A model generated the notes under the pieces. It was given only the letters and a program-made list of their open reading frames with translations. It did no database searches and had not been told where the DNA came from. A program made the translations under genes and the position numbers. A stretch of DNA of 64,000 nt from Setoptus koraiensis (lineage: Eukaryota > Animalia > Arthropoda). The stretch lies in contig CM106585.1 of NCBI GenBank assembly GCA_048013815.1, positions 18,848,001-18,912,000 on the forward strand. The letters are read 5' to 3'. This document shows, one piece after another, positions 4,301 through 45,111 of the stretch (positions are counted from its first letter, which is position 1; each line of letters begins with the position of its first letter).

Positions 4301-6317
4301 GCACAACAACAGCAACAACAACATTGTCAAATGTAAATAAGCTCAGTGGCGGCGGCGAGCGCCCGATTGAATAATCGTGCGCGCGCCACGACAACTACAA
4401 GCGATCGGGCATAGATTTGATTGATCGAATCGTATCCACTGACCGATCGCCGGGCCTCTCGGCGTCACTTCTTCGGGGCTCGCCGGCGCCCGGCCCCAAA
4501 TTGCAACGGCGACCGACGAACCAATTTCTGTCATAACTGCATATCTGTCATAACTGTATGCCGCCGCCACAACTGTAACGGAGCCCCCGCTCGCGCGCGC
4601 TCGGCCAGTGGGATCGGCGCGAAACTCGCACGCGTACGATCGCACAACGAGAACGCGATCGAGTGCCAGACACGTCCGAGTGAGCCGTTCGAGGGGCCCG
4701 CTTGTCGGCCGGCGCACTGGTCGCTACCATGAGCGACGACCAACGCAACAAAAAACAACAATATCTGCCAATATTTGCCGCCGGTAGTAACTGGTGGCGG
4801 TCAGTTGATATCGGATGTGTAGCGCGTGTCATGTTGATGTGATCATTCAAACACTGGATTGGCCCCCTGCCAAACCGCCGACAAACAGCCTGGCGGCGGC
4901 CAGTCAATGCGGCAGCAATTACGCAACGATGACGATGATGAGTAGCCGGAGTCTATTGCATGATATGTAAAAATAACAGAGACACGACAAACAAAGAGAG
5001 CACGCGCTAAAAAACAAACGCACTAATCGATTGTCGTTGCCACCACCCATTGATAGGCCCACGGGCTGGTGTACCCATCGACGTACCCATTGTGTGCTGG
5101 CGCAGCGGGCCGGCCGCTGTTGATCGAGCAAAATATCGGCGCATATCAATGGCCCGACAAGCGGCAGTTGTGAGAACCCGGCCAGTGGATACCCCCGCCT
5201 GATCCACATCCACTGGCTTATCCCCGCTGTCAGTTATGCATAATGCGCTCGTGCGCCAATCAATCGCCGGCTGCCAACGGGCGACAACTTCCGACTGCGC
5301 CTTTCAGCTGGGCGCCCCCGCTTGCGCTGGCGCCTCACAGCTTTGCCGGCGCCCCACAAACGGCCCACGCGCCTCAACTTTGCCAGCGCCCCACAAGCGG
5401 CCAGCGCGACATTAAAATGTAATTTCAAACGGGACTGCGGACGCCCAGAGCCGCCGGCCCGCGAACGGGCCCAGTCGAGGGCCGGGGGCGCGGGCTGAGC
5501 GCGCACCGGCCGACAAGTGCTCGGTCGAGTAGCAAGTGAGTGGTCAAGTAGCAGTTTAATTTACTCCGCTCGGGTCCGAATCACTTGAGCATGAACAAGT
5601 TGCGTCGGGTCTGTTTGCCGGGCGCTGCCTTTGGCTGGGGCGCGACGCCCATCGAGCCGGTCGCGCCGGGTATCGGGTGTCGGGCGCTGCCTTTGGCGCT
5701 CAAAAATGCCGCTCCGTTCAAACGCGCTCGTCGGGCCTCCACCAGTGCAGCTCGACCGATCGGCGCACTGGCCGCCAGAGGGCGTCGCCCGCCGCGTCCC
5801 ACAAACGGCCATCGGGGCCAATGATGGGGGGCCCAGGCCCAGAAATGAAACATAAAACAATAATAATAAGAGCGCACACAAGCGCAGTCATTAGAGTGAG
5901 AGAGTTGTGACACTTCTTTGTTTGTCTTCTGCTCCACTTGGCCTCGATGACACCAGCCAGCAGCGCCAAATATCTGTTGCCGTCGCTTTCATGGGTCCGC
6001 TCGCTTGTTACGCTGGCTCTCATGAGGCCGTTGCGCAGTTGGGGCCCCATTCTCGCCTCCGTCGGCTCGCCATTCTGGGCACTTTGGCGAATCTCGAGCG
6101 CTTTGGCAAATATCGGCGACTTTTGAGCCGATATTCGCCAAAACCAGCACACAAACGGAACAGCTAATGGGGCTCCGGTTTCGGGCGACGATCAATTATC
6201 AGCGATCGGGCCGCTGTGATGGTTTTATCGCGGCGACAAATGAACGGTTGCGCCCCTGGCCGTCGGGTGCACAAGGTATCGCGACTCTTGCCCGGGTCCC
6301 GTCGTCCGGTCCGCGCG

Positions 6318-6410
6318 GCGGCTCATCGGATCGCGCCGGCCCGGCGGCTCATCGGATCGCGCCGGCCCGGCGGCTCGTCGGATCGCGCCGGCCCGGCGGC
6401 TTGTCGGATC
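6318..6410. repeat. 26-bp minisatellite x~3.5
   Basis: GCGGCTCRTCGGATCGCGCCGGCCCG tandem copies. Confidence 0.9.
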
Positions 6411-9400
6411 GGCACGCATTCGTACATGCTCTATTGCGTCATATATTGCGTCATATATGCACAAGTGTGTCATTTTGTTGAAATTTGTGCCGAGTGACTG
6501 GCTGCTGGCGTTCGAGCGGGCCGGCCCGAGCGACACCCTAAGTAAACAATCTTCCGCGAATGAGTGTCAACTGATAACTGTTTATTTCTGGGCATAAAGT
6601 GCCCGCTCGCCTGCGCACAGTCGCTGCACAACAAACGAACGATTGGGCCCACTTTATGCTGCCAGCATCCTGTTTGCGCTCCGGCGCCGGGCCGTCACCC
6701 GATGCGTCTCAACGGGCCGGCCGCCGTAGACGCGCTGCTAGCGGGCGGCCGGGCGAGCGGATATTCAATCGGGCGTCGAATTGAATATCCGCCGACCAGC
6801 GGGCGTCTCGCCCGGTCGCCCGACGCAGTGAGCGCGCCCAGTCGACGGTGGGGCCGCGAACGCGAAAGCAATAGCCGTTGAGCGGCCAATAATGGTGGCC
6901 GCGTTCATTTATTGATGCATTTAGCCCCATACAAAGTCGGCTGTTTATTTTAGGGTTAAAAGCTTTTGATTGTAAACACAGCCAAATAGTCGGCTGGCAT
7001 ATTGTCGTCGGTTATTGTCGGCCGGGCCGGCACGTGATTTGGCGCGCCTTTTGAGCGGCCCATGCCCCGTTCGCTGCGGACCCGAGTGCACACTGTCGGC
7101 CGACCCGGTGTGTACACAGCGCTCACGGTTACACGTACGGGCTGGCGGCGTGCGCGCTTGCGGTAACTGGGCCCGTTGCACGTGCCCAGTGGCCACTCGG
7201 CAAATATCCGCCCGGGTGCCCGTTGTGCCAGTGCGTTGCCGGCGCCGGAGTTGCTGTCGTTGCTGTTGCTGTCGTTGCTGTTGTTGTTGTCGCTGGGGCC
7301 CACGCCGATTAACCGTTAGTTAGGGGCGGCTGGCGGCGCACGCAAACAGCGACAGATAAACAGAGAGCAAAAGTAATCAATATGACCATTGTATTACATA
7401 ACGCGCGCCCAATCGGCACACGATTGGCGCTGTGCGCCGCTTGTGCCGACTGCGCGCGTCTCGGGTCATTGGATATCGCTTGCGATCTCGAGTCCATCTC
7501 GCGGCCATCACCACTGCCGGCAGCATACATTGTGCCCACCAGATATATATATATATATGTCCGATATAAATGGACGACAGCAAACCATTTGGTCATTACA
7601 AGTCACCGTCGCCATTAGATTGGACCGTTACACGAGACAGTGGCGCGCACTGTTAGTGTGCGCGCCGCGCACAGTTGGCACACGATGGCCACCAGATAGC
7701 GAGAGATCCAATTAGGAGTGTGCGATGGAAAATTAAATTCAAATCGGACCGCGCGCGCAGTTTTAATCGAGCGACTTAATGGGCGCCCGGTTGATGGCCG
7801 CTCGCGGGCCCCAATCCATCAGTTTGCTCGCTGGCGAGTCGCGGGCACAAGCGCAAGTGGCGGGCTCAATCGCGAGTCGCGGGCACGGCGAGCGGGCGAA
7901 AAGTGATGACTTGTCGTTCTTTGTCGCGGCCGGCCCAACGAGGAGCCGACCGACGTCCGATGCATCGGGCCGCACGAAGCCGAGGGGCTGACCGAAGGCC
8001 GCTGCGCCGGGTTACGGTGTGCGCAGCGCCACTTGCGCACACTGCGGCCCACGGCGGGCCGATTATTCAAAGTGCGGGCCGGCTCACGACACAAATCAAG
8101 CCGCGACAAGATGGTTCAATTAGGCCTGATTGGGGCCGGCTCGGCCGCTGCAACTGCGCGCGCCGGCCCGCTGGCGCCCGTGGCTGTGCCGGCGAGCACG
8201 TGCAACCGCGATGGGCGCCCATTAATCACTTTGGGCCGGTTGGCTCAAGCCGGGAGCCTCGAAGGTCCGGGGGACCGTCAGCCCGGCGGCTGCCAAGATG
8301 GGCGCAGGCTCAAATTGATGGCGTCGCTGGCCGGGCACCCGGTGAAACAATGGCCGCTTGCTGCTCGCTGTCCGCGGTTGACCGTGAACTGGCTCATTGA
8401 GCCCGGCAAACCGGTTGCCGTTTTTTATTTTCACAAGAGTGCGCCCGATTCTCTCGCTTCTGTGCCGGGTTCTGGTCTGTAATGCCGGGTCGCCGGCACC
8501 ACAGACCCCCCCGAGATCCGGTGTCAGTTGCCTGTGAGCCTGGCTAGGCGTGTTGCGTAACTGGCCGAGGGTGGCGCTGCCATAGTCTGGCGTGTTGCGT
8601 AACAAGGGGCGCATGTTGTGCCGCAGTGTTGTTACAAATTGCAATGACCGACGTCGCGTTTGTTTGTTTTTGTTGTTTTTTATGCCTACTTCGGTTCGCT
8701 TGAACCGACTGCCGGCAGGGGCCGTCGGTCGGTTCGAATTGGCACGCCGTTCGGACTGGCTTGCAGCATCCGCAATTGCGACGCCAGCCAACGCTGACAT
8801 CCAATGCAAAGTGACGCGGCGCCCGACCAGCCCCGCAAAACTGGCAAAACCCGCTCACGGCGGCCCGCAAACTGCAATTGCGCCCGCCGATGGCTTATGG
8901 GGGGCTTAGGCGAGGATGTATGATTAGTTGTAGTTGTGCAGCATCAATTGGGCGCAGTTGGTGCTGTTTGTTGGAGCATGAATCAGGCCAACGACGCGGG
9001 CCCAAGACGACCGACGGAGCGAGACTCCGGCACACAATAAATGTCTGCGTGTTTGTGTGTACACGGATTAACATGACACGAATTTAAATTTTATCCGTGG
9101 CACCGCCGTGGCGACCGAGGTACCCATGTGCCCGATAGCCTAATAGGCCATTAGGCTATTAGGCGGCGGGCCGTCGGGCTGTCGGGCGGGCGGGCGGGCG
9201 GAGCAGTGGCGGTTGGGCTGGAATTATTATTACTGCTATTATTATTGCGCTGTGTGCAATTGAATCTTATCCCGGTGCAGATTTTCGACGGGCCGGCCCG
9301 CAGCGAGTCGCATTTCGGACGATTCAGGCGTCGATTCAGCCACCGCAGTTTTGACACTACGCGACCGCCTAATGATGACGCGCCGCGTACGTGGAGAGAG

Positions 9401-11479
9401 CCGGCTCGTGACAAAAACGAAACAATATATCAGCGAACGCTTCGGCAGCGAACGCTTCGGCATAGAACGGATCGCCAGAGAGAACACACTTTATAATCTG
9501 CTTATCGGGCCGAGAAAACGTGTCAGTTTATTGGAACAGTTTTATTTTACACAATTCAATTGTCGCTGCCACTGCTCGTGCGAGCCACTGATAGCCGGCG
9601 AACGGTGCCAGTCGGGCCCCAGCGAGCAAACTGGAAAAAATTGTCTCATTGTCTTGTTTGTCTAATACACAATGTGACTCTTATAGGGCTTATAAATGAC
9701 GGCTTATCAGCGATGGGGCGCTGATTGGGGCCACGGCGATTGGGCTTAAATGGCTGGCATTATGTGTGATATTTAGCAACGGAATGTGCCGCTGTTGTGG
9801 CGCGCAATGTTCTCACAGTCGCACACACTTGGCAAGTGTTAGCGTGATCGATGGGGGTTTTAAAGGCGCACCGGAAGTGGCCACTAATTCCTTTGCATGA
9901 GTTATTGTGCATTGTTGTTGGCGACGAGGCGCGCTTGTTGCCGCCGACGGATAATCATGCCACGAACGTGTGTGTGTGTGCTTTAATTAGTGCATTAGTG
10001 AGCATGAATTAGTGAACATGAATAAAACAGTTAATTATGTGAATTATTTCTGACCAGAGTCAAGCCAGAGTCTCCGCAGCAAGTTGTTTCTTGCGGCGGC
10101 GTTGTTAGTGGGCTGGCAAGTGACGATGGGCACAACAGTTATGTAACGGCCACCGCTGACAGTTATGCACAATTATGCAGTGCGTACGTCAACCGGCCGA
10201 CAAGTTGCCGCCGACAAACTCATTTAACAGTTGAGTTGTGAGTCGTTGTTTGTCGTCGGCTGTCGGCCAACAACGACGACCACCAACACAAGGCAACGCG
10301 ACGCACAACAACAAGCAAAACTCCCCGACAACAATGCAAACGAGGCACGGCTAATTGATTGTTGGCCGTTAAATGATGTTTGCGTCATGTTTGCGCAACA
10401 CTAATGAGCCTAATGAGCATGATCGAGCTTGAATCACGGCGGCGCCACTAGCTTGCCAGCGGCGGCCAGCCAACAGCAGACAGCGGCACAGTTGGCACAC
10501 GAACAATGTTTGTTTGCCATGCGATAATTAACATTTGAATGAGCGACGCCATCGCCGTGCGCTATGGTCCCGGCCGCGGTCTCGCTAGCCCGCCAGCAGC
10601 CAGCGGGTTAGTCAGCCAGCGAGTTAGTCAGCCGACGAGTCAGGCGGCCGGCCGGCGAGTCACAAGACACGGCACAATTAGCGCCCCACGGGTGGCGCAC
10701 GCCCACACCGAGCGTGCCGGCAAGCCAGACACGCTCGGGCCACTAGCGGCGGACAGCGACATCATTAGAGCGACTGTTGCTCGCCGGCCGCCGGTCACTG
10801 GTGGCGGGTTACTGGTGACCGGTCACTGGTTGAGCCCGGCTGCTAGTGAGGCGAGCCGGGCGCGGAGCCGGCCCGCGACCACGCGGGCCGCCGCCGATCG
10901 GAGGCGGACAGCCGATGGAAGGCCCGCGGAGAGCCCGCGGAAGGCTGGCCGAAAACCGCTACGGCGCCCATTATTCATTTGTCAGCGCCACAACTAAACA
11001 TGACAGTTTTACACTGCTAACTACACATTGTGCAAAACTGTTACAACCAAAATGATGATGATTCTTTGTTGGTCACACACACACACGCTCACCAATAAGC
11101 TGCCCACGCCCCCTTGCTGGCGCTCACCGTTTGTCGCCAGTGGGGCGCTTCAATCGGCGACAACTTGCAAAATGCTGGCGAGAAAAAAAAAAGTTGGGCC
11201 CACAAAGAGAATGGGGCCCCCACCGACGGGCACAAAATAATAAATTGGCGCGCGTGCTCCAATGTTGAGCCGGCACAGTGAATACGTACGCAAACAGTGT
11301 TGCGATGGAGCGGGCCAAAAAGAAGAAAAAACAGCCAACAAACACATAGAGACAGCCAAATTGGATCACTGCAAATCAGTGAATCCAGTAAGGGTGCGCG
11401 TGCACGCAGTGGGCGCCCCAAAGAATTATGTATGCGCCGGCCTCTTATCTTGTTCTTCCGTTGCGCGTTGTTGTGCGCG

Positions 11480-11570
11480 TTGTTGCAGTTGTCGTAGTTG
11501 TCGCTGTCGCTGAAGTTGTCGCTGTCGCTGAAGTTGTCGCTGTTGTAGTTGTCGGCGTGGTTGTCGCTGT
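11480..11570. repeat. Degenerate GTTGTCGCT-type triplet-derived repeat
   Basis: GTTGTCGCTGTCGCTGAA is duplicated within a GTT/GTC/GCT tract. Confidence 0.7.
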
Positions 11571-13154
11571 CGAGTTCTTTTTCGACGAGTGGCGTCGAGT
11601 ATTGAGTTGCAGTGGTGTTAGAGAGAGGAGGCAACTTTGCGTAGCCGCTGCAAACGCGCACACAATAAATGCCGATAAACGGTGGCGAATTTGGCAAAAG
11701 TTGAAGAAGAAGAAAACGCAATCACGTCACACATGTAAACTTGGAGAGTGGCCGCCATTAGGGACGGCCCCCAGTTTCAACAAGCGCGCAACATTGCGCG
11801 TTGGGGCGCCTCAGTTTCTCCGTTGGGCCCATAATTGAATCATCACCACCAGTGGCACTACTCATTGACAATTGTGCGATCGAGCGAGCGCTTGCAGGCT
11901 CGCCGTTGCGGCCAAAGCAAACGCTGTGCTGCGGCGCATTTTTATTATGCTCTAAAAACATGAAATAATTGTAAATTTTCAGCGGCACTCGGTCCATTGT
12001 GGTGCACCCAAGTTTGGTCCGATCCGGCGGGCTCTTATGTAAGCGCTCATATTATATATATTATATAAATTGTATATGTTATATGTGTTGGATGTGTTAT
12101 ATGTGCGGGCTGGCGGCCAACTGCAAAAGTTCAACTTGTGCAACATTAATGCAATGGTAATGGGCTACATCCATTGGCGGCCATCGGTGGTTGCATAATA
12201 AACGACTAGTGCTTGTGACAGAGAGCACACAAGCGCGATTAAACGAAGCGCAAAGTGATTTACAAATCCAATTTAGTGCTAATTACCAACGCGGGCCCAC
12301 TAAATTGAATTCGCGACTGCCAGCGCCGCAGCTGGCTCGCTCTTGTGGGAGCCCTCCGCTCGTCCACTTGTAGTTGCAGTTGTAGTGGCCGTTGTAGTGG
12401 CCGTTGTAGCTGCCAGTGTAGTCGCTCTGAAATTGTCATTTCGCACACGCTGCCAGACAGAACGATGCCAGAGAGACTTATGGCGGACAGTTCGGGAGGC
12501 CAATGGCGGCCCGATCAACAATTAGGCCCGGTTCATTGGTGGCGATAAGTTTATTGTTATGGCGCTATCTTGTCCCGGCCAGTTGCTCGTTATCTGAGCC
12601 GCTCGCAGCCGAGTCACACGCACATGTGCTGCGCCCCGAGTGTGCCCATATCCCGGTCATTTGCTGCTGATTTCCCAGTGACATCCCGATCATTTGCCGG
12701 CGTTTTCCAGCGATACTCAGCCTTTTCCAGCGATATCCCGGTGCCCCAATAGCCCAGTGTCACAGTATCATATTATCCCGGTGTCATAGTGTCCCAGTGT
12801 CATAGTATACTACGGGCATCGCGGTGTCATAGTCGCAGCCGTAGCCGGGCCTGGCCTGGCTGGCGCGCTACTTGTCGCAAAGCGCTGATGTAATCCTGAT
12901 GCCTGATTCGCAACAACAGATATCGCCAAAGAGATAAGCACGGGGGCTCGAGCTCGCTCAGTTTAAGCCATTATTATTATCTGCATTCTATGATTATTAT
13001 GCCATTGCTGCATGCCTGACGTGCTTCTCCTTCTCGTCATTGCTCGCCGTTGCTCGCCATACCATGTACACCTAGCGATGATACCCAATCGGGCCGCTGG
13101 CACTGCATGTATTGCGCCCACTACGCGCTAAGTGTCGCAGCAAGTTGGCCCATT

Positions 13155-21931: not shown

Positions 21932-24900
21932 ATGACGACTAAAAACATCAACTACCAATCCAATGGTAGCAACAACAATAACAAACCTCTGATTAGTGAT
22001 GAATACGATAATGGCCTGCCTATTCAAGGTGGACAATCCATTTTAGCGCCACAGTATGCCTATCATATTTATGATCAAATTGTTCCTTACATGATCAGCA
22101 GCAACACCACCACTTCCAACAATGTCAACAATAGTCAATCGACCAACGATACTAACAATACTGCTACCACCAACAACACCCTTTATGATCATATTTATCA
22201 TCAAATGCCTGGTTACTCACTATCTAGCACATTGAATAATTATGATGCCATCCTACAGCCTAATCTAATGCAACACCAGCATCCATCTATAAGTATGGGA
22301 CCGTCTTCTTTCAAATCGTCGTCGACTTCCTCGTCTTCGGCTGCCTCAGCAAGTACCACCACCACCACAACCTCAGGTACCAGTAACAATGGTGGTCAGT
22401 GCAATCAATCAACAAATCAATTGTTGCAACACCACCATCTTCATCAAACAAATCAGCATCACCCTCAGCAGCATTTGCATCAAATTAATAATCAATCATC
22501 CTATAATTTGGCCCATCATCTAAATGGTGCTTTAACAACTGTACCTTGTCGAGATCGTCATTGCACACTTAATTTAGCAGCAACAAATTTCAATACTAGT
22601 GGTGGTAATAGAAGACATCTTCAACATCAGCATTCATATAATCACAGCTTGCATGCAATGCAACAGCATCAGCTACTAGCTCAAGCCTCAAACAATAATA
22701 GTCATCATCTTCACAATAATGTTATTGTCAATCATCACAATCACCAACAAAATGCGAAAATCAGCCCATCTTCCAAGGTTCTATCTAAGATCTCATCATT
22801 ATTTGCACCCTCCATTAATGGTATGATTGGCTTGCGTAATAATCTTACAAATTTAGCAAGCAATTCTAACACTAATAGTCTTAAGAAAACAACACAGTTG
22901 TCACAACATTTTCAAAGCAATCAAAAAACATCGCCATTACATCTTCAAACTCAACTATCACCTATGCCTCTATTAGGTGGTGTCAATGGTCAACAGACGA
23001 CTACTACAACGTCCACCTCGGCCTCAAGTCATTCAAAATTTCACCAACAAAAATCTCCTAATCATCACCTCTTTCAACACCCAGCTGATATCATGAATGT
23101 GAATCCTGACTCATGTCGTGATGATTCTAGCGATCTGAGTATCAATTATGATTTGATCATAATCAAACAGCAACAACATGAAAGGAAACAGCAACGTAAA
23201 CGAATTCGTAATAATCTTATATTCTGGGCATTAGTGACTACAATTTTAATTAGTGTGATAGGTATTACAATAAGAGCCATCTTCATGGGTGAGTACAGCT
23301 TCCGAATTAAAGTCTCTTCAGTTAGAAAAAAAAACGAAGGGAAAATATCGCCAACTTCTCCAGTTCCATTTTTTATAGGAGCTAAGAGAAGAAATATTTT
23401 ACTAAATAAACGAATTTTTTTCCATACCCTAAATACGCATTCATCAGATAATCAAGCACCCTCATCTCAGAATAGTAACTTTGAACAATTGTATCCAAAT
23501 GGAAATCCTGAACTCACATGGCAAACTCAAGCAGATCCTAGCAATGATCCAAACAATAAAATCCTCAAATCAAGCCCATATTCTCCAAGAGGCAACAGTG
23601 CGCCATCTACCGTTCCAATTTATAGACCTAATTCGATATCCGTGCCATGGGAGCCTACTAGATATCCAGATACAGTAGACCTAACGCAATTAAAAGTTGG
23701 TCCCAATCAGATACCTGATATTTCTAGTCAACAAAATCCTATCTACAGGGGCGACATGGTTCCTCAGTTGAGAGCCCAAGCAGAATGCAGTGGTCATGGA
23801 GTTTCTATTAGAGGCGTTTGCAAGTGTGATGTGGGTTACAAAGGTCTAGATTGTCAGCAAAGTATTTCTGAATGTTCTTCAAGCAATTGTAACAACAATG
23901 GCCAGTGTATCGATGGTCAGTGCCAATGTTATGCTGGTTTCACTGGCGATCAATGCGCGGATCGGGATTGTAATGATAAGAAATGTTCGAATAATGGATT
24001 TTGTTCACCTGTTACAGGACAATGCCAATGTACTCCAGGATACAAGGGAGTTTCATGTGAACTACGTGATGATGAGATTTTGCAACGATTGTTAAACTGC
24101 TCGAATCATGGCCAACTCAATTTGAATGAAAAGAGGTGTATCTGTGATCACGGATTTGTTGGATTTGATTGTTCAGAGGAAAAATGTGATGCAAATGTTG
24201 ATTGCGGGCAAAATGGTATTTATAATTGTCAATCTGGAAAGTGTACTTGCAACGACGGCTATTACGGTGATAGATGTGAGTTACAGCTATGCTCATCACA
24301 ATGTATGCATCATGGACATTGTGTCAATGGAACTTGTGTTTGTCAACAAGGATTTTATGGTAAACACTGCACTATTGATGGATGCCCCAACGACTGCAGC
24401 GGTAGAGGCGAATGCATTAGAAAAAGTCCCCTCTCCCAGGAATGGCACTGTCATTGCCAGCCTGGCTCTACCTCTGACGATTGTAGTCTTTTGTTAGAGC
24501 AGACGTGTGACGATGGTATCGACAATGACGAAGGTGAGTTAGAAACTGAAAATTGATATTCAATCATACTCAATCTTGATTTATATACTAAGATCTAACA
24601 ATCAATACCCTTCACATATTTTTATACATATATATTGACATAATTATTTTATAGATGGATTAATCGATTGTGCTGACAGTGAATGCTGCTCAGAACGTGC
24701 CTGCCAGAATAGCACATTTTGTCTCAAATCAGCAAATCCTATGGATATTCTTATGAGAAAACAACCACCACCACCAACCTCATCATTTTTCCAAAGGATG
24801 CAATTCTTGATAGATAAAGATTCATCACAGAGCTATGCCACTCTCAAGGACTTCACAGACAGGTAAGTGAAAGTAAAAATACTTTTCTATAACATCATTA

Positions 24901-27013
24901 TTTCCTATATTCACTATCTCCTTTCACTTGTAACTTAAGCTATCCTTAACTAACATTACTAGCCTATATCTTACTGATCAACTTATGTGAATAACTTCCT
25001 ACTATCATGGTATCATATTAACGACTCAACTCGCTGAATATAACTTTATTAAACTCGACACTGTTGACTCTAATCTATAAAACTACACATCTATCAACAA
25101 CTACATAAAAATATCAACTTGATAACTATCACTATAGTGCAATATCTAAACATCTTGTCGCCGAGTAAGTCTTGTGTTGCACACTCTACTTCTACCCTTT
25201 TTCTATTCAGACAACCATTTTATCTTTTGTCGACCATGACTAACATATTTTCATCTTCCTTCTTTATTTTAAACTTTAGTCGAGCTTCAGTCATTCGAGG
25301 TAGAGTAGTTCATTCGAAGCAGGGTATCATAGGAGTGAGAGTATCGATCGTGCAGCAAGTCAGTTTAGGAATAACACGTAAGTATTACACTTTTGCGAAT
25401 CTATAATCAAGTTTCAGAGCCGAGAATGTCTGAACTAACTTTACATATATTGTTTCAAAATTTACATGAATTATCAATATTTAAATGCAGTTACTAGAGA
25501 AGGTGGCTGGTTTGACATCATGGTCAACGGTGGAGGCGCTGTCACACTAGAGTTCAGGCGTGAGCCTTTCTTGACAGTCGAAAAGACTATTGCAGCTCCA
25601 TGGAATGAGATTGTTTTAATAGATCCTGTCGAACTGCAGCTGGAATCTGCCAGTAAGGATGTTAAATTCCAAAAGATACCGCCAATAACAGGAAATCCTA
25701 TATGCCCGGAGCACAACAATGAGCTCATGAAACCTGAAGTTTTAACACCACCTAAAGCATCAGCAAAACACATTCAGAAAAGTTCCATTGCAAATCAGAA
25801 ATCGTCAACAAGCGCTATCTTGAGGAACTCAAGGACCGTGCAACAATCAATTGTTCTACCAGGCACATCCGCTCCGGGTTCGAATCAGCAACCAATTCTG
25901 CTTTTGTATAACTCGAAACGAGCCAACGAATTCATGTCTACCATAGATTTACAAGTGACACCGACTGAACAAGAAATGAAGCTTCCCGACAACCTCAAAG
26001 CGGTTCATCTTAAAATAACAATTGAAGGGAATTTATTTGAGCAGGTCTTAGAACCTCAATCAAATCTTACTTTTACCTACGCCTGGAATAGAAGAAATGT
26101 TTACAAACAGAAGTCTTTTGGTCTATCAGTAGCAAGAGTATCTGTAGGTTATGAATATTTCAGCTGTCAGCAAATCATGTGGACTATGAAACAAGTTCAA
26201 CTACCTGGTCATGATATGTTAATATCTGATATTGGATCTCATTGGAATTTGAATATCCATCATCGTTATAACTATCACGATGCCATTTTGCATCGTGGAG
26301 ACGGGCAAAATTTTTATCTGAAACTCGATAAGCCACTATGGTCTGGTCAATCAAATGTACCGGTCATAAACAAGCAGGGAGAGTATGAAATACCGTCGCC
26401 TGATAATAGCGATGAATTGCTTATATTTAATAGAAATGGCTTGCATATAGCTACAAGGGACGTATCCGTGGCTGGTACAACATCAACATTAGCAACGGTT
26501 TTGAACTCGGCTCATCAGCAAGTCGATAGCAATGGTCACAAAAATAAATACACCTTCACCTATGATGTTAATACCTCATTTGGGCGTCTATCCTCTGTAA
26601 TAGACTCAACCGGAAATAAGATCTACATATTGAGAGATGGACATCATAATGTCAAAACAATCGACACCACTTTAGGTGGTAAATGTCAACTCGAGATCAC
26701 CAAGAATGGCTTGCTTCTTTCTATTGTGACCAATAATCTACGCCAGCAATCTTCCATCCAGAATGAGACAAAATTCACTTTCGGCTATTACACTGATGGC
26801 GGTTTGTTAAAACAGAGTTATGATGCAAATAGCGGTGATACTTATGAGTTTAGCTATGACGATTTTGGACGTGCCCAAAGTATAACACACAAGGATAGAA
26901 AGAGTTCAACAGTAACTGAGTGTCCGATCAGTACTAGTATGCACACAAATACCATAAACAGCGCCAACAGCAAACAATTGGATTGCCATGAGTTAGTTTT
27001 GGATGAATTTTAA
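21932..27013 (+). CDS. Teneurin (Ten-m/Ten-a family)-derived type II membrane protein, internally deleted and C-terminally truncated (~1,423 aa spliced)
   Basis: Proposed exons: 21932-23288, 23448-24533, 24655-24862, 25280-25377, 25491-27013. Donors are GTGAGT/GTGAGT/GTAAGT/GTAAGT, acceptors are AG, and phases are compatible. Translation gives a low-complexity intracellular region, basic stretch RKQQRKRIR, TM helix LIFWALVTTILISVIGITIRAIF, 7 EGF-like repeats and the teneurin Cys-rich motif CDDGIDNDE|DGLIDCADSECC. It continues RKQPP..SFFQRMQFLI, RASVIRGRVV, LTREGGWFDIMVNGGGAVTL, FTYAWNRRNVYKQK, WNLNIHHRYN, NTSFGRLSSVIDSTGNK and YDDFGR. Ten-a versus Ten-m not resolved. Confidence 0.92.
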
Positions 27014-28589
27014 ATCAAAACTTGCACTTCGAACAAGCAACTATACTTAAGCCAGCTTGATAAAATCAAACATCGTACATGCTATCTGGATAGCAAATTA
27101 ACGAGAAAGGAATGTGATATACTATTGTTATAAATTATTATTATTATTATTACTATTACAGAGTGGAAGTTTGAAATTACCTTTTGAGAACTTCTTTGCT
27201 AAATAAAACAAATTATACAAATTATTCATCTTGACTCTCCTCATTTAATTGTGCAACATGCTTATTTCACGTGTTGCGTCAGCGTCAACGATTCTGTGAG
27301 ATGCCATATGTGTTTGATAACTAATCTTGCATATTCCATCGTTGAATATTTTTGGGTTCAGGCTCGTGTGCCCGACTTTTGTTGGTCTGTCAATGAGTGT
27401 CATGAGTTGTTGTGTGTGTTCGTACAACGATTCACGTAACTCGAATCAAGTTAACCAAATACTAAATTGGCGCATTCAAAGCTGCCTCTGTTGTTCGGTA
27501 ATCCTACGTGGTTAAGGTAGGAGATCCTCGAGGACATGAAAGTGATAAAGACTGTAAGCAAAAATAATTTGTTGAAAATCGGAGTATCAGCCTCGTTCCT
27601 ATGTTATATTACTCAGCATCGATAGCCCAGTAATTTTAAATTATTTATATTGCATAGTATCATTATTGCAAGTATTTCAAAAAACGTGGGTTTAAGAATA
27701 GCGTATTCTTTGAGCTCTCAATCTGGAGAGTTCAGAAAAGCTATAGTTGGGTCAATCTGAGTGTCACACTAAAGAGGTTTACCTTGTAAGACACTTCATA
27801 ATAACAAGCCAAGCAGCCTTCAAAACAAACAACTGATGACAACAAAACCAAATACAAAAGTTGGGGAGCCCGTTCGATTTTGGAGAATTAATTCCATATC
27901 GTAGCACCTTGCTTCATCTATCAGGGATCTACTTGAGGATTCCATTCGTATTGTCTGTTGTCTTCGTTAACTTACTTACCAGGAGCTAGCAATTAATTTA
28001 AGCCCCATGTTTTCAGATGTGTATCAGATTGATTTTATTCGATCGGCGCTCTGCATGATCCAAGTTCGAATAGTCCAAGTTTTACTGCTAAAAATTTTCG
28101 ATTCGCGCGCCAATTCTCTGAGTCACTCGTGATGTGTTCGTTTCGATGGTGCATCATAAAAAACAACAACAGAAGCACTAACAAGCATAATAAAGCATCA
28201 ATAGAGAAAAAGTCTGCGTAAGTTCGATTCCACTATACTTTCTATTATTGCATACAGCACCAATCTCTGCTCTTCGGATCATCTATAACCTACAAAGTAC
28301 ACACATGGATTCTTTGTAACAAGTCGAGTGATTGTCTTGGAATAGTCGTTTTTATTTACATCGACACCAACGCAGTTTTCTTTTTTCTATATTTTATTCT
28401 TCATGAGAAAACCTATTCCCCCCGCGGAACAAGCCACTCACATTATGATATTTTTCTTCGATCAAGATCTATGAAACGCAAGATTATTAGCATCATCCGG
28501 CCGAGATATCGAAATTGTTCTCTTGTGACTACGCACTTACAGAAATTCATGACACACTTTAAATACTCGAGACCACAAGATATCTAAGA

Positions 28590-38514: not shown

Positions 38515-41500
38515 TTATTTAGCCATCATCTGAGAGAATCTTTTATATTCCATTTTCAATGCCTGCCTATTAGGGGCAAATTGTTCCAATCGTTGTAACG
38601 AATCATCGTCTTCCACACCAAATATACTAGAGTATAACGATTTTAGGAATGGAGCCGATTCAAAGTGGACGGTGGTTGTTGGCAACTTGATCATTGCTTC
38701 AAATTGTCGTTCATCTATTGCTCTTCTGTGGGTAGGTTTGTCGGTAACTTTGGCCGTTTCGTTAGGAGTATAGTCCTCAAATTTTTGCTCTGTGATACAG
38801 TATAAATCGCGAACAACCTTTCTGCAGTGCATCAAAAGTAAACAACGCCTCAATGATGCAACTAAGTCTCGTACTTGAAGTATAGAGACAGGAAATTCAT
38901 TATCATCGTCGTTGTTTGATTGCGCATCCAAGGCCTCTATCAATGAGTGATCTAAGCCTTTCTGCTGTTGCAATTTTCTCTTCTTCATTTCTCTTTTTCT
39001 TTTCTTCAAGCGCTCCTGTTTTGCAAGCAATCTCTGCTGTCTTCTCTCCTCAGCACTTTCATCGTTATTTTCACCATCCGAAATATCTTCGTCGGTTGTT
39101 TCATCGTACAATTCATCTTCATTAACTACTATGTCGGTGTCATCCATATCATCTGCGTCATCTACTTCCTCAACCTCCGCATTAGATAATTGTAAAATAT
39201 CCCTAAACTGAGAGGATGTGTGAGATACAGAGATGGATAGAGTCATATCTATTTGGTGTAAGAGGTAGAATGGCTCATCTAGTAATGTAAAAGGTAAAAA
39301 CATGATGTTGTCACTGATGTATTGAAGAATATCACTTTCGCTGCAGGTGGATAATACATATCGACTTTCGTTGACGTCATTGTGAGAAAGCATATTGGGT
39401 GCTGAAGATAATGTAGTTAGATCGAAGTACCTTAACAATGCATTGATAAAGGCCCGCCTTTGTTGACGTGCTGTGGCGATGACAGAATAGAGAGTGGATA
39501 ATCTGGCATTTACATTGACAGCATCTTTTGATTGAGACGCTTGCTGATTGTTGTTGGAAGACGAAGGCGAATCATTATTGTTACTCTGCGACTTAGTTTC
39601 GTTCGATTCGGAGCGACAAAAACCTCTGTTATGCCTGTTGAGAATGAAAGACTCTAATATTCCTTGTTTGGATTTCATTCCAACGAAATTGTGATATTTG
39701 CGCTCGATCTCTTGAAGGACATGGTCAGCTCGAATTCGTATACTCAGATCATCATCTGTCGAAAGTGCTATAAGACTAGGAACAATTTGTAAGGGGTTTA
39801 TGTGTCCTCCGTTATGTACACTATGTATCAGATTAATAGCGGCCCTCCTTATTCTGATATCTGATGACAATGCACAACTCAGCATGTCTCTAAGATATAG
39901 CTGAATCACGGATGATTGAGTTGAATTAGCGTCTTCCTGCTTGGAAGATGTCATCTCCTTTAGATTTTCTCGGGACCAATCGATCGCTGATGCCGATTTT
40001 ATCTCTTGTGTGACCTCATCTTGTAGATAATTCCTGAGATTGCTTAAAACACAGATGCTGGGTTCAGCGTTGTCTGTTTCTTTGAGATCTACTGCTTGTT
40101 TCATAAAGTGTTTGTATAGCGCTTGGGTCTCAGCTCTTAACATGAGCTGGGGTGATCTCTCAAAAAGGAATCCTAGTCCATTGAGGGATTTGAGCAATAT
40201 GTTCGTATTTGGCTTTACATGATTGGTGGAGTATGGATTATTGCAGGTATTATCTATATTTGATTCAACGTAATAGACTAGAGTACTAAATAGTGCATCT
40301 CGTTCTCTGATATTGAAATGTTTTGCAATCAAACCACAGGTGTAAAGAGATCGAAGAAAATATGCTCTGTTTTGCTCCAACATGCCTGGATTCATTCGAC
40401 AGTTTCGAATAACAGTGAAGAATCTTTTGAATATATCGTTAGAAAGTTGATGATTTTGTGTGTGCTTGTATATCAGCTCTGACAAACATGAAACACTGAC
40501 AGGTATAACTGGCGCTTGGCCTCCGAGTATAAGCTTTGTGAGATCTCCCTCTATCGTTTTGAGCGTACTTGCACTAGGATTAGACATAGTAGGTAAAACT
40601 AATTCAATTATCTGAATAACCTTGATGAGTATCATGAGTTCTAGTTGAGATTTGGCTTCAATTGACAGGTATGATTGCAAAGTTTCGACATGATGCATCA
40701 ATAAGAGCGGTGATACTTTAGCAAATAACCACAGAGTAGTCATAGCAGCTAAACAATTAGCCCTAGTATTTGTGTCTTGTGAGCTCGTCGTTAACATATC
40801 CGATACTAGAACCGCTATTATCTGTGATGAAGATGCTAAAGTTTGTCGGACACTGATGAGTTCCGCTGACACAACTTCCCCGTTATCTCCAGTTTCGGCT
40901 ACATCGGTGCCTCTTCGCCTGGATGTCGCTGATTGATTGTTATCGCCTGATTGATTCGGTTTCACTTTTAAAAGACTAGTCAGAAGTTGGTGCAACCACT
41001 CAGTTCCAATACCTTCAGCCAAAACAGTAGCTACAACGTGGGTGATACACGTAACTTTGTTAACCACAGCTTCCTGGCTTTTCTCATCTTTGAACCACAT
41101 CGTAGTGAATGTTTCGGTGACAAGCCTTCTAATACCCTCGCCTTCATCATTGATTCTTTTGATCATTTTAGAGCAAATTTCCGGTACTCGTGAGTAGGAT
41201 GAATACTGTAAGCAAATCTCACGAAGAATCTTAATAACTCTTTTCCTCACAGATACTCCAGAATCCATTATTCTTTCGGTTATTATATCGTAGTAGCGAT
41301 CCACCAAGTTTTGCGATTGACTGTTCAGTATGAACCGACCAATGAGCTCAACAGTTGATTCTCTCACACTTGCAGACTGATCAAGCAGGGATAGCTTGAT
41401 TGCTTTTTGTAGATCATCACGGGCAAGTAGATTTGTGGCACAGTTTTGGGGAGCGTTATTTAGAACATGGGATAGAGACTTCATGGCACGAGATCTTATG

Positions 41501-44488
41501 TTGGTATTTGAAGTACTTGATAGGGCTGCAACAATATGAGAAAGCGCAGCATCAAGTAATTTTTGTGTTGTTGGTAGATTCATGTCCAGCATCTTGATTA
41601 TTAGTTCAGCCGTTCTTTCATCAATAGTTGTGTCGTCTTCACAAGTAGATTCAGGGGACAGTGGACCATCTAATTGATTCAACAAATCATCAGTCGTACT
41701 AAAATTGAGATCATCAGAATCGTTGCCACCTCTTTGTTTGGAAGAAACAGAAATTATACGAAAAAAGTCCCGAACCATCTGATATTGAATATCTCCACTA
41801 GTTGGTCCAGACGATGCCACAGTTTGTTGCTCTTCACCGTTATTTTGAAGTGAAGATTTTCCATAGCTTCGAACGGCATTACTATTTTGGCTGGCACTGT
41901 TACTTTCATCGTCATCAGATATCGTAGAATTGGCTTGTGTTGCAGGGTTTTGAGCTTCATATAAAGCCTTAGCGCGTCTCTCAAGCTCTTTCAACCACAC
42001 GGCACAAAATATATTACGTGTACATTTTGAAACACCTTTCTCCCTCTGACAGAAATTTAACAGTGCTAGCCAAACTTTTCGTTCGTCTTCGGGAGTGAAT
42101 ATGGTCTGGTCTCCGTTTTCCAAGTTGTCGTCAGTGTCATTAACTGCAGCGGTATCTTCGTCCGTGGCTTCTGAGTCTTCCTCAGTTTCACTATCTTCGA
42201 TAACTCGTTTCAATTTTCTCTTTATCTGCTTCTTTCGCTGTCTTCTTTTATTACTGCTCTTGCATGAGGGTCCCAAGGGTGTAGGCAACGATCCAAGATC
42301 AATAACCTTCAAAGATCTCATAACTTCATCCTTATACTGACTGAGTAGACTGTTTTCCTGGACTAAGCGCGCGCATATTGTTCCTAGATGTTCTAAACTG
42401 GCTAGCTTTAGTGTTTGGTTCGTAGGTAATGCGGCGCTCTTCTTTCCTTGGTGAGGAGTGATGTTTTGAATGAGGAGCTTGACCAAAACTTGAGTTAGCA
42501 ACTGCGAAGTACTCCACGTCGGTTTATGCAGAGTAGCCATAAGATCCTCGACGAAGTTGTCGAATAGAACCCTGTAGTCGCATTCATCTTTTTTATCTAC
42601 ACCACAACATCGTCGCAAGAATGATGATAGAAATGCAAATGACACGCGAATGGCGACATCATATTGAGATCTCAACATTTTATCATAACTCTGTATATCT
42701 TTGAGGTCTTCATTTTGTTGCGTTTGTGTGAGATTTAAACCAACTTTAGTCCTATCAGTAGCAGCTGATTTTTTGATGGTAAAAAGGGACTGAATAAGTT
42801 GCATGATTAATGCAGAAAATATAGAAATTGATTCTGTCGAGGACGAATGACTATTAGTTCCTATCTTATATTGTACTCTATTGCGTTTTGTTGTTGGTAG
42901 TCGGGCGATTGAATGGAGCAATTCCTCAAGTATAACAGTCTGGTGGGTCTTATATGAAGCAAATATAGCCGTGATCACATGTAGGGCATTGAGCTGTAAC
43001 TCGTTAGAAGATGATGAGTCCATCAAGAAGAAAGCCGTCAATGCTGCCCGTGATGTCGACAACACTAGGGTATCTGTCAATGTAGCTTCGCTTCTACAGG
43101 TTAATAATTCATTAACAAGAGCTAAAACTTCTGAACTCTTCGCATTGAGCTTCGTAAGAGACTGTTTATTGAAGAGGCATCTCCTCGTAGAATTGCTTTT
43201 ATCCTGATTATTACCCTTACTTATTTTCTTTGGCGATGAGCAGTGACCTCCTGTAGTAGTGTCTGTTATCATCAACAAAGCGGAGTTCACAAATGTAATT
43301 ATGGCTTCAACACATTCTTCTAAGTAGACTCGGCTAGACATGCTCCTGGATGTCATTATATTGAGAGCAATAACAGAGCAATCACAACAAATTTCGAATT
43401 TGAGCATCCGGGTGGCTTGAGCGTTGTTTTGGCCATTGTACTGATTGGAATCATCGTCTGAATCTTGAGAATCATTATTTCCGGTAATATTACCGTTGTC
43501 GTCTTGGATTTGACTGCTTTTCAGTACTGCACTTTGAACATCCAACTGAGATGTGAGAGCACTCAAAAGAGAGGTTAATTTGTTTATATTGACATTTTTC
43601 ATTTGATTGGACCGTTTCAGTTTGGCACTTATGGCAACCAGATGTGATAATTGCTTTGGAGTAAGATTGACGTATTTGATAGATCCATCACCAAAACCGT
43701 TTTTCATATGCTCATCGAATATATCATCAAGGAATCTTTCAAATTTCGGTAGCAATTTATCACTTGATCCGGAGGAATCTATAACCACCTTTGCAGTTGA
43801 TTTTTGGGTATCTTTGTGCACGTGCTTCTCTTTCTTGATTTTAGTTTTGAGCTTTTGTTGATGCTGAAGATGCGTATTATGTTTTTGCTGATGGTGAGTC
43901 TGGTTAGTAGCCTGGTGTTGCGACGAATGCGTAGTCTGTGGCTGCTGATGAGGTGGATAATGCTGGTGCGTTGGTTGCGGTTGAAATTGCTGATAGGGGG
44001 GCTGAATTTGTTGTGCTTGTGCTTGAAGTGGCTGATGAGTTATGTGAGGTGCCTGATTAAGATGAGTTTGGTGTATTTGTTGTTGCTGATGAGCTTGGTG
44101 TGCTGGGTACTGCGGATGCACCTGATGAGCTTGGTGTTGAGGGTGCGCTTGTTGTTGCTGGTGCTGTGAATGGGTTTGCTGAGGGTGACGTTGTGGATGC
44201 GTTTGCTGAGGTTGATGGTGCTGAGATGGATGGTGAACCTGGTTTTTAATGTGTGCTTGAGGGGTCTGGTGAGGATGCTGCTGCTGTGGCGTTGGTCGCA
44301 CTGGCGACTGTGTCTGATGCGCCTGCCTAACTTGATGGGGAATTGTATGCAAGGGTGTCACGGCTGTTTGTATTGGTGGTGTAGACGGCACTGGAGCTAC
44401 AGATGGTGGTACAGATATTAAAGGTGGTATTGATTGTGGTGGCGGTTTTTGCTCTAGATGTTGTTGTTGCTGTTGATGTTGTTGTTGC

Positions 44489-44522
<34 letters not shown>

Positions 44523-45111
44523 GCTGTTGTTGTTGCTGTTGTTGCAATTGTTGTTGTTGTTGTTGTAGGTGCTGTTGTTGTTGTTGCTGTTGCTGCTGTT
44601 GTTGCAAAGCTGCAGAGCTAACAATGTCCTGAAAAATCTGTTGGTGAGTGCCAGGTGTTGGGTGTATTGTGGGTGAAGGTTGTTGTTGTTGGTGTTGTAT
44701 AGGTGGTTGTTGATATGGAATGGGTGCCTGACATGGCACTGAAATTACATCCTGAAAAAGTTGATGATTATTTACAATAATTGACATCAATGGTGACGCT
44801 TGATGATATGGGCGAGCAGATGCTGAAGGGTAATTAGATGAAGTGGCAGCTTGAGTAGCTGGCTCAGCATCCTTGAATGTGAGATTGTCTAAATCATTAT
44901 GTAATCTGGCCAACTGTAATGCGGGTGCAATTACAGAAGCGACCTCGTGCAATTCGGCTGCTGTCTGTATAGGTAGATTGTTATTATCTATGAGGAGACA
45001 ATCATTGTCATTCTTATGTCGGGCTTGGGGCAATGGCAATTCATCCAGCAAGTCCACGAGACTATGTATAGTTGCCAAACCAACTCCATTCATGTTGAAT
45101 AAATGTTCCAT
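38515..45111 (-). CDS. Nipped-B: Nipped-B / NIPBL cohesin loader (single 6.6-kb ORF, 2,198 aa)
   Basis: N-terminal motif LATIHSLVDLLDELPLP (MAU2-binding region). HEAT-repeat region with DQSASVRESTVELIG, RIMDSGVSVRKRVIKIL, RINDEGEGIRRLV, GHINPLQIVPSLIALSTD and KYHNFVGMK, plus a C-terminal Nipped-B_C-like region. No introns are needed. Confidence 0.96.
44445..44600 (-). repeat. CAA/CAG polyglutamine tract within Nipped-B
   Basis: Encodes about 45 residues of near-pure Gln with occasional His/Leu. Confidence 0.9.

What the first reader, a model, noticed from the sequence alone, without database searches (positions are those of the whole stretch)
26560..27230. Teneurin ends early in the YD shell, with no Tox-GHH/TCAP
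Seen in sequence: after about 110 aa of early YD-shell sequence (to FSYDDFGRAQSIT) the frame runs into a short non-homologous tail and stops at 27013. AT-rich 3'UTR-like sequence follows, with AATAAA near 27202. The ~1.6 kb before the probable calpain first exon (about 2.5 kb before its main exon) has no YD-repeat ORF. Established: full teneurins (~2,700 aa) have a YD barrel of roughly a thousand residues that binds latrophilin and encloses a linker leading to the toxin-like C-terminal domain. Inference: this ~1,420-aa protein is an EGF + Ig/FN-plug 'mini-teneurin' without the barrel or toxin domain. The stop-free, spliceable 4.3-kb CDS argues for function rather than pseudogene decay.
Basis: partly seen in the sequence, partly recalled or inferred. 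Interest (0 to 1): 0.8.

Follow-up and report, generated by a model that had tools for sequence, protein, structure and literature searches.

The report
Mite teneurin without its barrel half
This tiny plant mite keeps, expresses and conserves a teneurin (nerve-wiring adhesion protein) gene that stops just after the start of its barrel; the barrel and toxin-like end were found nowhere in the assembly, so the front half seems to work without them.

Summary

- **Gene end.** The last teneurin exon (25491-27013) ends at TAA 27011-27013, about 180 aa into the YD shell. A 3'UTR conserved to about 27228 follows, with AATAAA at 27202-27207.
- **Expression.** Spliced contigs from two public runs read unspliced through the putative donor near 26885 and through the stop.
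- **Assembly.** Independent DNA assemblies are contiguous across the site.
- **Conservation.** A related species (about 83% nucleotide identity) has the same stop and the same downstream genes. dN/dS is 0.045 for the last exon and 0.03 for the YD stub.
- **Missing half.** Three back-half queries (tick, Sarcoptes, a 10-protein profile) found no barrel, ABD or Tox-GHH in the 48.8-Mb assembly. Matched front-half controls found both teneurin loci.
- **Paralog.** The second teneurin, on the other chromosome, keeps its NHL propeller but stops at the equivalent point.

The truncation is not private to this species. Ten-m-like genes of other eriophyoid and trombidiform mites end at the same place; Sarcoptes, ticks, spiders and insects are full length. 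I found no paper describing this.

An earlier follow-up on this window (s1-321310) reached a similar view. A first-reader note (s1-318797) flagged a teneurin on another piece of this genome, probably the paralog.

Verdict: a real, selected mini-teneurin; a new variant of a known kind.

The parts
21932..23288 (+). Coding exon 1a: ATG, about 420-aa N/Q/H-rich cytoplasmic domain and the transmembrane helix (LIFWALVTTILISVIGITIRAIF)
   Evidence: ORF. No Pfam hit. dN/dS against L009 is 0.08-0.10. The donor G|GTGAGT at 23288/23289 is read from the alignment.
23289..23447 (+). Inferred intron of 159 nt that happens to be open and in frame in this species
   Evidence: GT..AG ends. Identity drops here, and there are 2+1+1-nt deletions in L009, where the interval is 158 nt and so must be spliced out. 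Not covered by the laid reads.
23448..24531 (+). Exon 1b: juxtamembrane region and the teneurin EGF array
   Evidence: PF25024 EGF_TEN E 2.9e-54. The 3' end is fixed by the spliced joint 24531/24653 in run X8. dN/dS 0.16-0.18.
24653..24860 (+). Exon 2: cysteine-rich region
   Evidence: Spliced joints 24531/24653 and 24860/25278 (GT..AG) in X7/X8. 64% identical to tick teneurin residues 932-1000. dN/dS 0.04.
25278..25377 (+). Exon 3: first part of the TTR domain
   Evidence: Joints 24860/25278 and 25377/25491. No amino-acid change against L009.
25491..26335 (+). Last exon, first part: rest of TTR, linker, FN-plug, up to the point where the NHL propeller is missing
   Evidence: PF25020 and PF24329. 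Aligns to fly Ten-m chain 117-368 and tick residues 1035-1286. dN/dS of the FN-plug part is 0.01.
26336..26884 (+). YD-shell stub of about 180 aa, ending with the repeat FSYDDFGRAQSIT
   Evidence: Aligns to fly Ten-m chain 723-870 and tick residues 1625-1783. RHS_repeat hit. The AlphaFold model shows about 13 strands, mostly at pLDDT 80-90. dN/dS 0.028, bootstrap range 0.01-0.05.
26885..27013 (+). 42-aa C-terminal tail with two cysteines (TECP..., ...DCHELVLDEF) and stop codon TAA 27011-27013
   Evidence: Same stop and same last 16 residues (one change) in L009. dN/dS 0.18; neutrality rejected at p=0.004. The two-cysteine pattern recurs in relatives P0002 and P0003. Predicted disordered.
27014..27228 (+). 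3'UTR with an ATT microsatellite (27123-27164) and AATAAA at 27202-27207
   Evidence: RNA-type contigs reach 27092 (X7) and 27122 (X8). A further 39 nt of the X8 contig presumably lie in the skipped repeat. Depth is zero at 27205-27578. 86% identical to L009 up to about 27228, after which conservation collapses.

Best explanation
This is a real, expressed and selectively maintained teneurin gene whose coding sequence ends early in the YD shell.

The product is about 1,423 aa. It is a type II membrane protein made of:
- a long cytoplasmic domain and one transmembrane helix;
- the EGF array, the Cys-rich region, TTR and FN-plug;
- a beta-sheet stub of about 180 aa from the start of the shell;
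- a short cysteine-bearing tail.

It has no NHL propeller, no closed YD barrel, no ABD and no Tox-GHH/TCAP.

Shown: the 3' part that encodes the barrel was lost from the Ten-m-like gene at the same place in other eriophyoid and trombidiform mites. In this species no barrel-coding sequence was detected anywhere in the assembly.

Inferred:
- The loss was a single event in an ancestor shared with those mites.
- The protein works as a barrel-independent cell-surface organiser, through its conserved cytoplasmic domain and its EGF, TTR and FN-plug surfaces.
- It cannot use the barrel-borne functions reported for full-length teneurins, namely barrel-mediated latrophilin binding and a C-terminal TCAP peptide.
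- It also cannot supply the propeller side of the TTR/propeller self-association seen in fly Ten-m.
For: Expression and gene end:
- Contigs of runs X7 and X8 skip the three introns with GT..AG ends. They cover 25543-27092 (X7) and 26347-27122 (X8) without a joint, passing the putative donor near 26885 and the stop. Depth is zero in the intergenic stretch.
- The 3'UTR, including AATAAA, is conserved to about 27228 and not beyond.

Assembly:
- DNA contigs of two other studies are contiguous over 24400-27742 with 0 and 5 differences.

Selection and synteny:
- The relative L009 has the order teneurin, calpain, Rieske, MDH, Nse2 and the same stop.
- dN/dS is 0.045 for the last exon (bootstrap 0.028-0.069), 0.028 for the stub and 0.18 for the tail, with dS of 0.6-0.8 for the last exon.

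No missing half:
- Nothing in the window matches tick residues 1784-2754.
- Nothing in the 48.76-Mb assembly matches the tick back half, a profile of 10 back halves or the Sarcoptes back half.
- The matching front halves find both teneurin loci at E 2e-71 to 5e-78 for this gene and 1e-20 to 2e-38 for the paralog.

Shared truncation:
- Proteins ending at tick position about 1785-1823 come from Fragariocoptes, three unnamed eriophyoid contigs, Panonychus citri (RefSeq, 1367 aa), Brevipalpus, Halotydeus, Leptotrombidium and Dinothrombium.
- In Halotydeus the 10 kb downstream hold no back half, and the next gene is an alcohol dehydrogenase.

Fold:
- The stub is predicted as confident beta hairpins. 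The best structural match is fly Ten-m 8fia.
Against: - The RNA evidence is assembled contigs of runs whose library type is not on record. Contigs drop rare isoforms and cannot fix the poly(A) site.
- The whole-genome negatives depend on a word-based first look. Its Pfam mode missed even the known stub, and a very diverged back half could escape. The Sarcoptes back half is only 28% identical to insects.
- If this is the published Setoptus koraiensis assembly, its BUSCO completeness is only 89% (PMC11920263).
- Function is entirely inferred. No binding partner or phenotype is known.
- The single-loss scenario is not proven. The second paralog stops at the same position but sits on a branch too long to place.
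Confidence: 0.85

Rival explanations
1. The gene is full length, but the rest lies elsewhere. Either a long isoform splices from the AAA|GTATAA site near 26885 to distant YD exons, or the back half is now a separate gene (fission).
For: - A plausible GT donor lies right after FGRAQ.
- In nematodes, gene models that end at this point are probably split models. Steinernema has a neighbouring gene annotated as a YD-shell protein.
- Contigs can miss rare isoforms.
Against: - No joint leaves 26000-27200 in either RNA-type run.
- No back-half match in the window or in the assembly with three different queries, while matched controls worked.
- The tail beyond the putative donor and the stop codon are conserved and under constraint.
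- The downstream neighbours are unrelated genes, conserved in order in a relative.
Confidence: 0.05
2. It is a decaying relic: a pseudogene, or a gene on its way out in a streamlined genome, which only happens to be open.
For: - Eriophyoid genomes are strongly reduced (PMC7738191, abstract as listed).
- The protein has lost most known interaction domains.
- One intron (23289-23447) is open in frame, which shows that open frames can arise by chance.
Against: - dN/dS is 0.03-0.18 in every exon at dS 0.3-0.8.
- All coding indels between the two species are multiples of three. The only frame-breaking indels lie in the inferred intron.
- Introns are spliced correctly in RNA-type contigs.
- The same architecture persists across mites that are only about 40-55% identical.
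Confidence: 0.03
3. It is an assembly artefact: a misjoin or collapse near 27 kb removed the rest of the gene.
For: Short-read contigs break at a high-copy repeat at 27680-27790, about 0.7 kb downstream of the stop.
Against: - Two independent assemblies cover 24400-27742 without a break, and their next contigs overlap it and run on to calpain.
- A different species has the same junction and gene order on one 26-kb contig.
- The stop lies inside uniquely covered sequence.
Confidence: 0.02

Closest known systems
Drosophila Teneurin-m (PDB 8fia) and other full-length teneurins (about 2,500-3,400 aa)
   Same: - Best sequence and fold match.
- Same order of EGF array, Cys-rich region, TTR, FN-plug and first shell strands.
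- Type II membrane topology.
   Different: - Lacks the NHL propeller (fly chain about 369-722).
- Lacks everything after fly chain about 870: most of the YD barrel, the linker, ABD and Tox-GHH/TCAP.
- The fly self-association interface is TTR against propeller (PMC10240212). Only the TTR side is left here.
Predicted 'teneurin-m-like' proteins of trombidiform and eriophyoid mites: Panonychus citri XP_053203899.1 (1367 aa), Brevipalpus obovatus, Halotydeus destructor, Leptotrombidium deliense RWS31258.1, Dinothrombium tinctorium, Fragariocoptes setiger KAG9508581.1
   Same: They end within a few dozen residues after the same YD repeat (tick position about 1785-1823) and have no Tox-GHH. They are probably orthologues; the tree places the eriophyoid sequences in one clade.
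   Different: - Those proteins keep the NHL propeller. This one and its closest relative have lost it.
- Their tails differ in length and sequence.
- They are database predictions. I found no paper that discusses the truncation.
Second teneurin of the same genome (G000:C2:17284153-17287190)
   Same: It has TTR and FN-plug and stops after a YD repeat at the equivalent profile position. The next gene is unrelated, an M1 aminopeptidase.
   Different: It keeps an NHL propeller (PF25021). It is extremely diverged (branch length 4.8), so its origin is unresolved.
Bacterial Rhs/YD-repeat and Tc toxin shells
   Same: The stub is made of the same YD/RHS hairpin repeat.
   Different: Those proteins form a closed shell around a toxin domain. 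About 13 strands cannot close a shell, and there is no cargo.

Membership tests
Teneurin (by descent: orthologue of arthropod Ten-m) | Best matches are teneurins, collinear over all retained domains, and the locus is conserved in relatives | tested here: met
   phmmer: 1802 hits, the top named ones all teneurins. PDB best match is fly Ten-m at E 1.8e-89. Syntenic orthologue in L009. Nested in the eriophyoid clade.
Teneurin (architecture) | Type II membrane protein with an N-terminal cytoplasmic domain and one transmembrane helix | tested here: inconclusive
   A hydrophobic stretch, LIFWALVTTILISVIGITIRAIF, precedes the EGF array. No topology predictor was run. No Pfam hit in the cytoplasmic part.
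Teneurin (architecture) | EGF array, TTR domain and FN-plug | tested here: met
   PF25024 E 2.9e-54, PF25020 E 6.7e-19, PF24329 E 2.8e-18.
Teneurin (architecture) | NHL beta-propeller | tested here: not met
   No PF25021 hit. The alignment jumps from fly chain 368 to 723 and from tick residue 1286 to 1625.
Teneurin (architecture) | Complete YD-shell barrel (PF25023, 909 positions) | tested here: not met
   Only about 180 aa of the start of the shell remain. There is one RHS_repeat hit and no PF25023 hit in this Pfam copy. The protein ends at tick residue about 1783 of 2754.
Teneurin (architecture) | ABD and Tox-GHH domain with the TCAP region at the C-terminus | tested here: not met
   Absent from the ORF and the window. 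Not found in the assembly, with positive controls.
Teneurin-latrophilin pair | A latrophilin/Cirl-type adhesion GPCR is present in the genome | tested here: met
   SUEL lectin + GPS + 7tm_2 on one strand at G000:C1:973.6-977.4 kb. Orthology to Cirl rests on domain order only.
Teneurin-latrophilin pair | The teneurin barrel, which is part of the solved teneurin-latrophilin complexes | tested here: not met
   The barrel is absent. The complexes are PDB 6vhh and 6ske, cited by their titles. That the lectin domain contacts the barrel is from my knowledge of those papers, not read here.

The most novel reading that the evidence does not exclude
In eriophyoid mites, and for the Ten-m-like gene in trombidiform mites too, the essential job of teneurin sits in the cytoplasmic domain plus the EGF/TTR/FN-plug front half. 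The bacterial-derived barrel and toxin module, usually taken as the defining core of the family, is dispensable. This species may then be an animal with a nervous system and a latrophilin-like receptor but no teneurin barrel at all. The identical truncation point may also be a rare genomic change that links Eriophyoidea with Trombidiformes.
Probability: 0.35. Interest if true: 0.8.

Novelty: new variant of a known kind. Interest (0 to 1): 0.62.

Why it matters
Teneurins are usually described as a large 'superfold' built around a YD barrel inherited from bacterial toxins. The barrel, propeller and toxin-like end take part in the known extracellular interactions.

Here nature has run the deletion experiment. 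The barrel, the toxin end and the propeller are gone from this gene, yet what remains evolves under strong constraint (dN/dS about 0.05). This points to a barrel-independent function of the front half that could be studied directly.

It also raises the question of what the retained latrophilin-like receptor binds in these mites.

The shared truncation point is a candidate character for the disputed placement of four-legged mites.

The truncated proteins are already in public protein sets under ordinary names, so people using them as 'teneurins' in comparative work should know that they are half-length.

Tried and rejected
- **Pfam-family scans of the own genome** (RHS_repeat, Tox-GHH, TEN_YD-shell) gave nothing. 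They also missed the known stub, so I do not count them as evidence of absence. I relied on protein and profile queries with matched positive controls instead.
- **Third homologue search** with the Sarcoptes back half returned only 25 hits, mostly unnamed. It could not show whether trombidiform mites keep a separate back half.
- **Look-ups of the Panonychus and Brevipalpus RefSeq proteins** found no contig on record.
- **The Oppiella contig** ends 1.5 kb after the truncation point, so it is uninformative.
- **The tree** could not place the second paralog (branch length 4.8). Only the quick search finished.
- **Rfam** found nothing in the window.
- **A claim that all Acariformes lack the barrel** was considered and rejected. 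Sarcoptes has a complete barrel and Tox-GHH. Leptotrombidium has a third teneurin model that runs past the truncation point to the end of its contig.
- **Nematode and spider gene models** that end near the same point were considered as further truncations. They are more likely split models.
- **No complex prediction** was run. The obvious test is the TTR of this protein against the propeller of the paralog, but that needs a TTR chain joined from two exons.
Full report
**What is in the sequence**

The window belongs to a compact, intron-poor animal genome of 48.76 Mb in two contigs. One contig is 24,533,333 bp. A paper on the eriophyoid mite Setoptus koraiensis reports a 47-Mb assembly on two chromosomes with N50 24.53 Mb (PMC11920263). 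The closest named relative of the protein is from another phytoptid, Fragariocoptes setiger. I therefore take the organism to be that mite or a very close relative. This is an inference.

The teneurin gene lies on the + strand.
- Spliced contigs of two public runs (X7, X8) give the joints 24531/24653, 24860/25278 and 25377/25491, all with GT..AG ends.
- The last exon is therefore 25491-27013.
- Its frame reads through TTR, FN-plug and a run of YD repeats ending FSYDDFGRAQSIT. A further 42 residues follow, then TAA at 27011-27013.
- AATAAA is at 27202-27207.
- Comparison with a relative shows one more intron at 23289-23447. It is open in frame here but is 158 nt in the relative.
- By exon arithmetic the CDS is then 4,272 nt, giving 1,423 aa.

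**How much of the teneurin is there**

Against the solved fly Ten-m (8fia), ORF residues 9-289 match chain 117-368 and residues 293-473 match chain 723-870, out of 1962. Against a full-length tick teneurin (P0007, 2754 aa), the window matches residues 692-1286 and 1625-1783, and nothing after that.

Two things are therefore missing:
- the NHL propeller, which is the subject of another note of this scan;
- the whole back half, meaning most of the YD barrel, the ABD and Tox-GHH.

The retained shell part is about 180 aa. An AlphaFold model built on a 19-sequence alignment predicts it as about 13 beta strands, mostly at pLDDT 80-90. The tail is predicted disordered. Foldseek gives fly Ten-m as the best match.

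**Is the short end real?**

- *Assembly.* DNA contigs from two studies other than the probable source are contiguous over 24400-27742, with 0 and 5 differences. They break only at a high-copy repeat at 27680-27790, and the next contigs overlap and continue to calpain.
- *Transcripts.* X7 and X8 behave as RNA. Introns are skipped, and intron and intergenic depth is zero. Their contigs cover 26523-27092 and 26347-27122 without any joint. A further 39 nt of the X8 contig presumably lie in the skipped ATT repeat. So the message carries the putative donor near 26885, the stop and the 3'UTR. These are contigs, so a rare isoform cannot be excluded.
- *Conservation.* A 26-kb contig of a related species (L009, about 83% nucleotide identity) has the same gene order: teneurin, calpain, Rieske, MDH, Nse2. 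It also has the same stop after ...CHELVLDEF. The 3'UTR is 86% identical up to about 27228, AATAAA included, and alignment collapses beyond that. Introns are 72-80% identical.
- *Selection.* dN/dS values are as follows:

| Part | dN/dS |
|---|---|
| Cytoplasmic exon (1a) | 0.08-0.10 |
| EGF exon (1b) | 0.16-0.18 |
| Cys-rich exon (2) | 0.04 |
| Exon 3 | 0 |
| Last exon | 0.045 (bootstrap 0.028-0.069) |
| YD stub | 0.028 |
| 42-aa tail (41 aligned codons) | 0.18 (7 synonymous, 6 non-synonymous differences; neutrality p=0.004) |

dS for the last exon is 0.64-0.83.

The tail is therefore coding. Its start aligns with the next shell strand of other teneurins. A two-cysteine pattern (EC... C-x-x-L-V/I) recurs in two other eriophyoid sequences.

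**Is the missing half elsewhere?**

Nothing in the window on either strand matches it. The neighbours are calpain, a Rieske/neverland-type oxygenase, malate dehydrogenase, Nse2 and Nipped-B.

In the whole assembly, three back-half queries found nothing at E up to 10:
- tick residues 1780-2754;
- a profile of the back halves of ten full-length teneurins;
- the back half of the acariform Sarcoptes protein.

The front halves of the same proteins, used as matched controls, found this gene at E 2e-71 to 5e-78. They found a second locus on the other contig at E 1e-20 to 2e-38. Pfam-family scans of the genome were too insensitive to count.

The second locus (C2:17284153-17287190, a 1012-aa ORF) has TTR, FN-plug and an NHL propeller. 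It stops about 26 residues after a YD repeat at the equivalent profile position. An M1 aminopeptidase gene follows. A first-reader note of this scan on another piece of this genome (s1-318797) says the same of a teneurin there, which I take to be this paralog.

To the sensitivity of these searches, the assembly holds no teneurin barrel, no ABD and no Tox-GHH.

**How old is it?**

An exhaustive phmmer search found many proteins that end at the same place. The named ones are listed below.

| Species | Group | Length (aa) |
|---|---|---|
| Fragariocoptes setiger | Eriophyoidea | 1027 |
| Panonychus citri | Trombidiformes | 1367 (RefSeq; two isoforms, 1367 and 1376 aa) |
| Brevipalpus obovatus | Trombidiformes | 1665 |
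| Halotydeus destructor | Trombidiformes | 1580 |
| Leptotrombidium deliense | Trombidiformes | 1569 |
| Dinothrombium tinctorium | Trombidiformes | 1935 |

All of these stop 2-53 residues after their last match to the tick protein, which ends at tick position about 1785-1823, and none has Tox-GHH.
- In an unnamed eriophyoid contig, a convergent gene follows 300 nt after the stop.
- In Fragariocoptes the frame ends with a genomic stop.
- In Halotydeus one exon covers tick residues 1001-1796. The next 10 kb hold no back half, and an alcohol dehydrogenase gene comes next.

By contrast, ticks, mesostigmatid mites, spiders, scorpions, horseshoe crabs, a sea spider and insects have the full back half. 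So does the acariform Sarcoptes scabiei, in a single exon.

Two limits apply to the wider claim. Leptotrombidium has a further teneurin model that runs past the truncation point to the end of its contig. Genome-wide absence of the barrel is therefore shown only for the present genome. The Oppiella contig is too short to tell.

In a quick tree the eriophyoid sequences form one clade (98% SH-aLRT). The window protein is nested among relatives that keep the propeller, so the propeller loss is the later event. The second paralog cannot be placed.

**What it most likely does**

This part is inference. The protein keeps a constrained cytoplasmic domain, the membrane anchor and the EGF, Cys-rich, TTR and FN-plug modules. 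It has lost the parts that take part in the described extracellular interactions.
- The barrel is part of the solved complexes with latrophilin (PDB 6vhh and 6ske; titles).
- In fly Ten-m the propeller binds the TTR domain of a neighbouring molecule (PMC10240212).
- The C-terminal TCAP region is also gone.

A latrophilin/Cirl-like gene (SUEL lectin, GPS, 7tm_2) is nevertheless retained.

The simplest reading is a barrel-independent role as a membrane-anchored organiser acting through the cytoplasmic domain and the front-half ectodomain. One testable idea is that its TTR binds the propeller still present in the paralog. I did not test this, because the TTR chain would have to be joined from two exons.

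**Novelty**

The truncated proteins are already in public protein sets under ordinary teneurin names. Three full-text searches found no paper that mentions truncated teneurins in mites. An earlier follow-up agent of this scan reached a similar conclusion on the same window (s1-321310). I checked its claims independently and agree with them.

I class the finding as a new variant of a known kind. It is an orthologue of Ten-m by descent that fails the architectural definition of a teneurin on three counts.

Noticed in passing
window 1-13000: About 12-13 kb at 55-60% G+C with no convincing ORF or Pfam-type gene. The rest of the window is 37-44% G+C. It lies upstream of the teneurin start, and its nature (regulatory desert, repeat or foreign DNA) is unknown.
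   Followed up: no
window 27680-27790: A high-copy element of about 110 bp. Summed contig depth is up to about 30 times the flanks in two DNA runs, many diverged copies exist, and short-read assemblies break here. There is no Rfam family in the window.
   Followed up: partly
window 23289-23447: A 159-nt intron with GT..AG ends that is open and in frame, so the 874-aa 'single ORF' overstates exon 1. In the related species the interval is 158 nt and must be spliced. Not verified by RNA.
   Followed up: partly
G000:C2:17284153-17287190 (L008 2153-5191): The second teneurin paralog has TTR, FN-plug and an NHL propeller but also stops just after an early YD repeat. An M1 aminopeptidase gene follows. 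It is extremely diverged (tree branch 4.8).
   Followed up: partly
G000:C1:973600-977400, minus strand (L013): A latrophilin/Cirl-like adhesion GPCR is retained: SUEL lectin, two GPS hits and 7tm_2 in consecutive ORFs. This is despite no teneurin barrel being detected in the assembly.
   Followed up: partly
protein P0011 (491 aa, Logan contig, unnamed): A second truncated teneurin without a propeller. It groups with Halotydeus (99% support), not with the eriophyoids, so the propeller may have been lost twice, or this is a short paralog or isoform.
   Followed up: no
L018 (Leptotrombidium deliense NCKV01000305.1): A third teneurin gene model, annotated as an N-acetylglucosaminidase-like protein. 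It continues past the shared truncation point and is cut off by the contig end, so trombidiform mites probably still have a barrel-bearing paralog.
   Followed up: partly
proteins P0026, P0029, P0065, P0099, P0149 (nematodes) and P0304/P0305 (spider): Many nematode teneurin models stop at about the same residue. In Steinernema the neighbouring gene is annotated as a YD-shell protein, so these look like split gene models. The recurring break point may mark a long or conserved intron.
   Followed up: no
window 38515-45111, minus strand: A Nipped-B cohesin-loader homologue is encoded as a single uninterrupted 2198-aa ORF, which illustrates how few introns this genome has.
   Followed up: no
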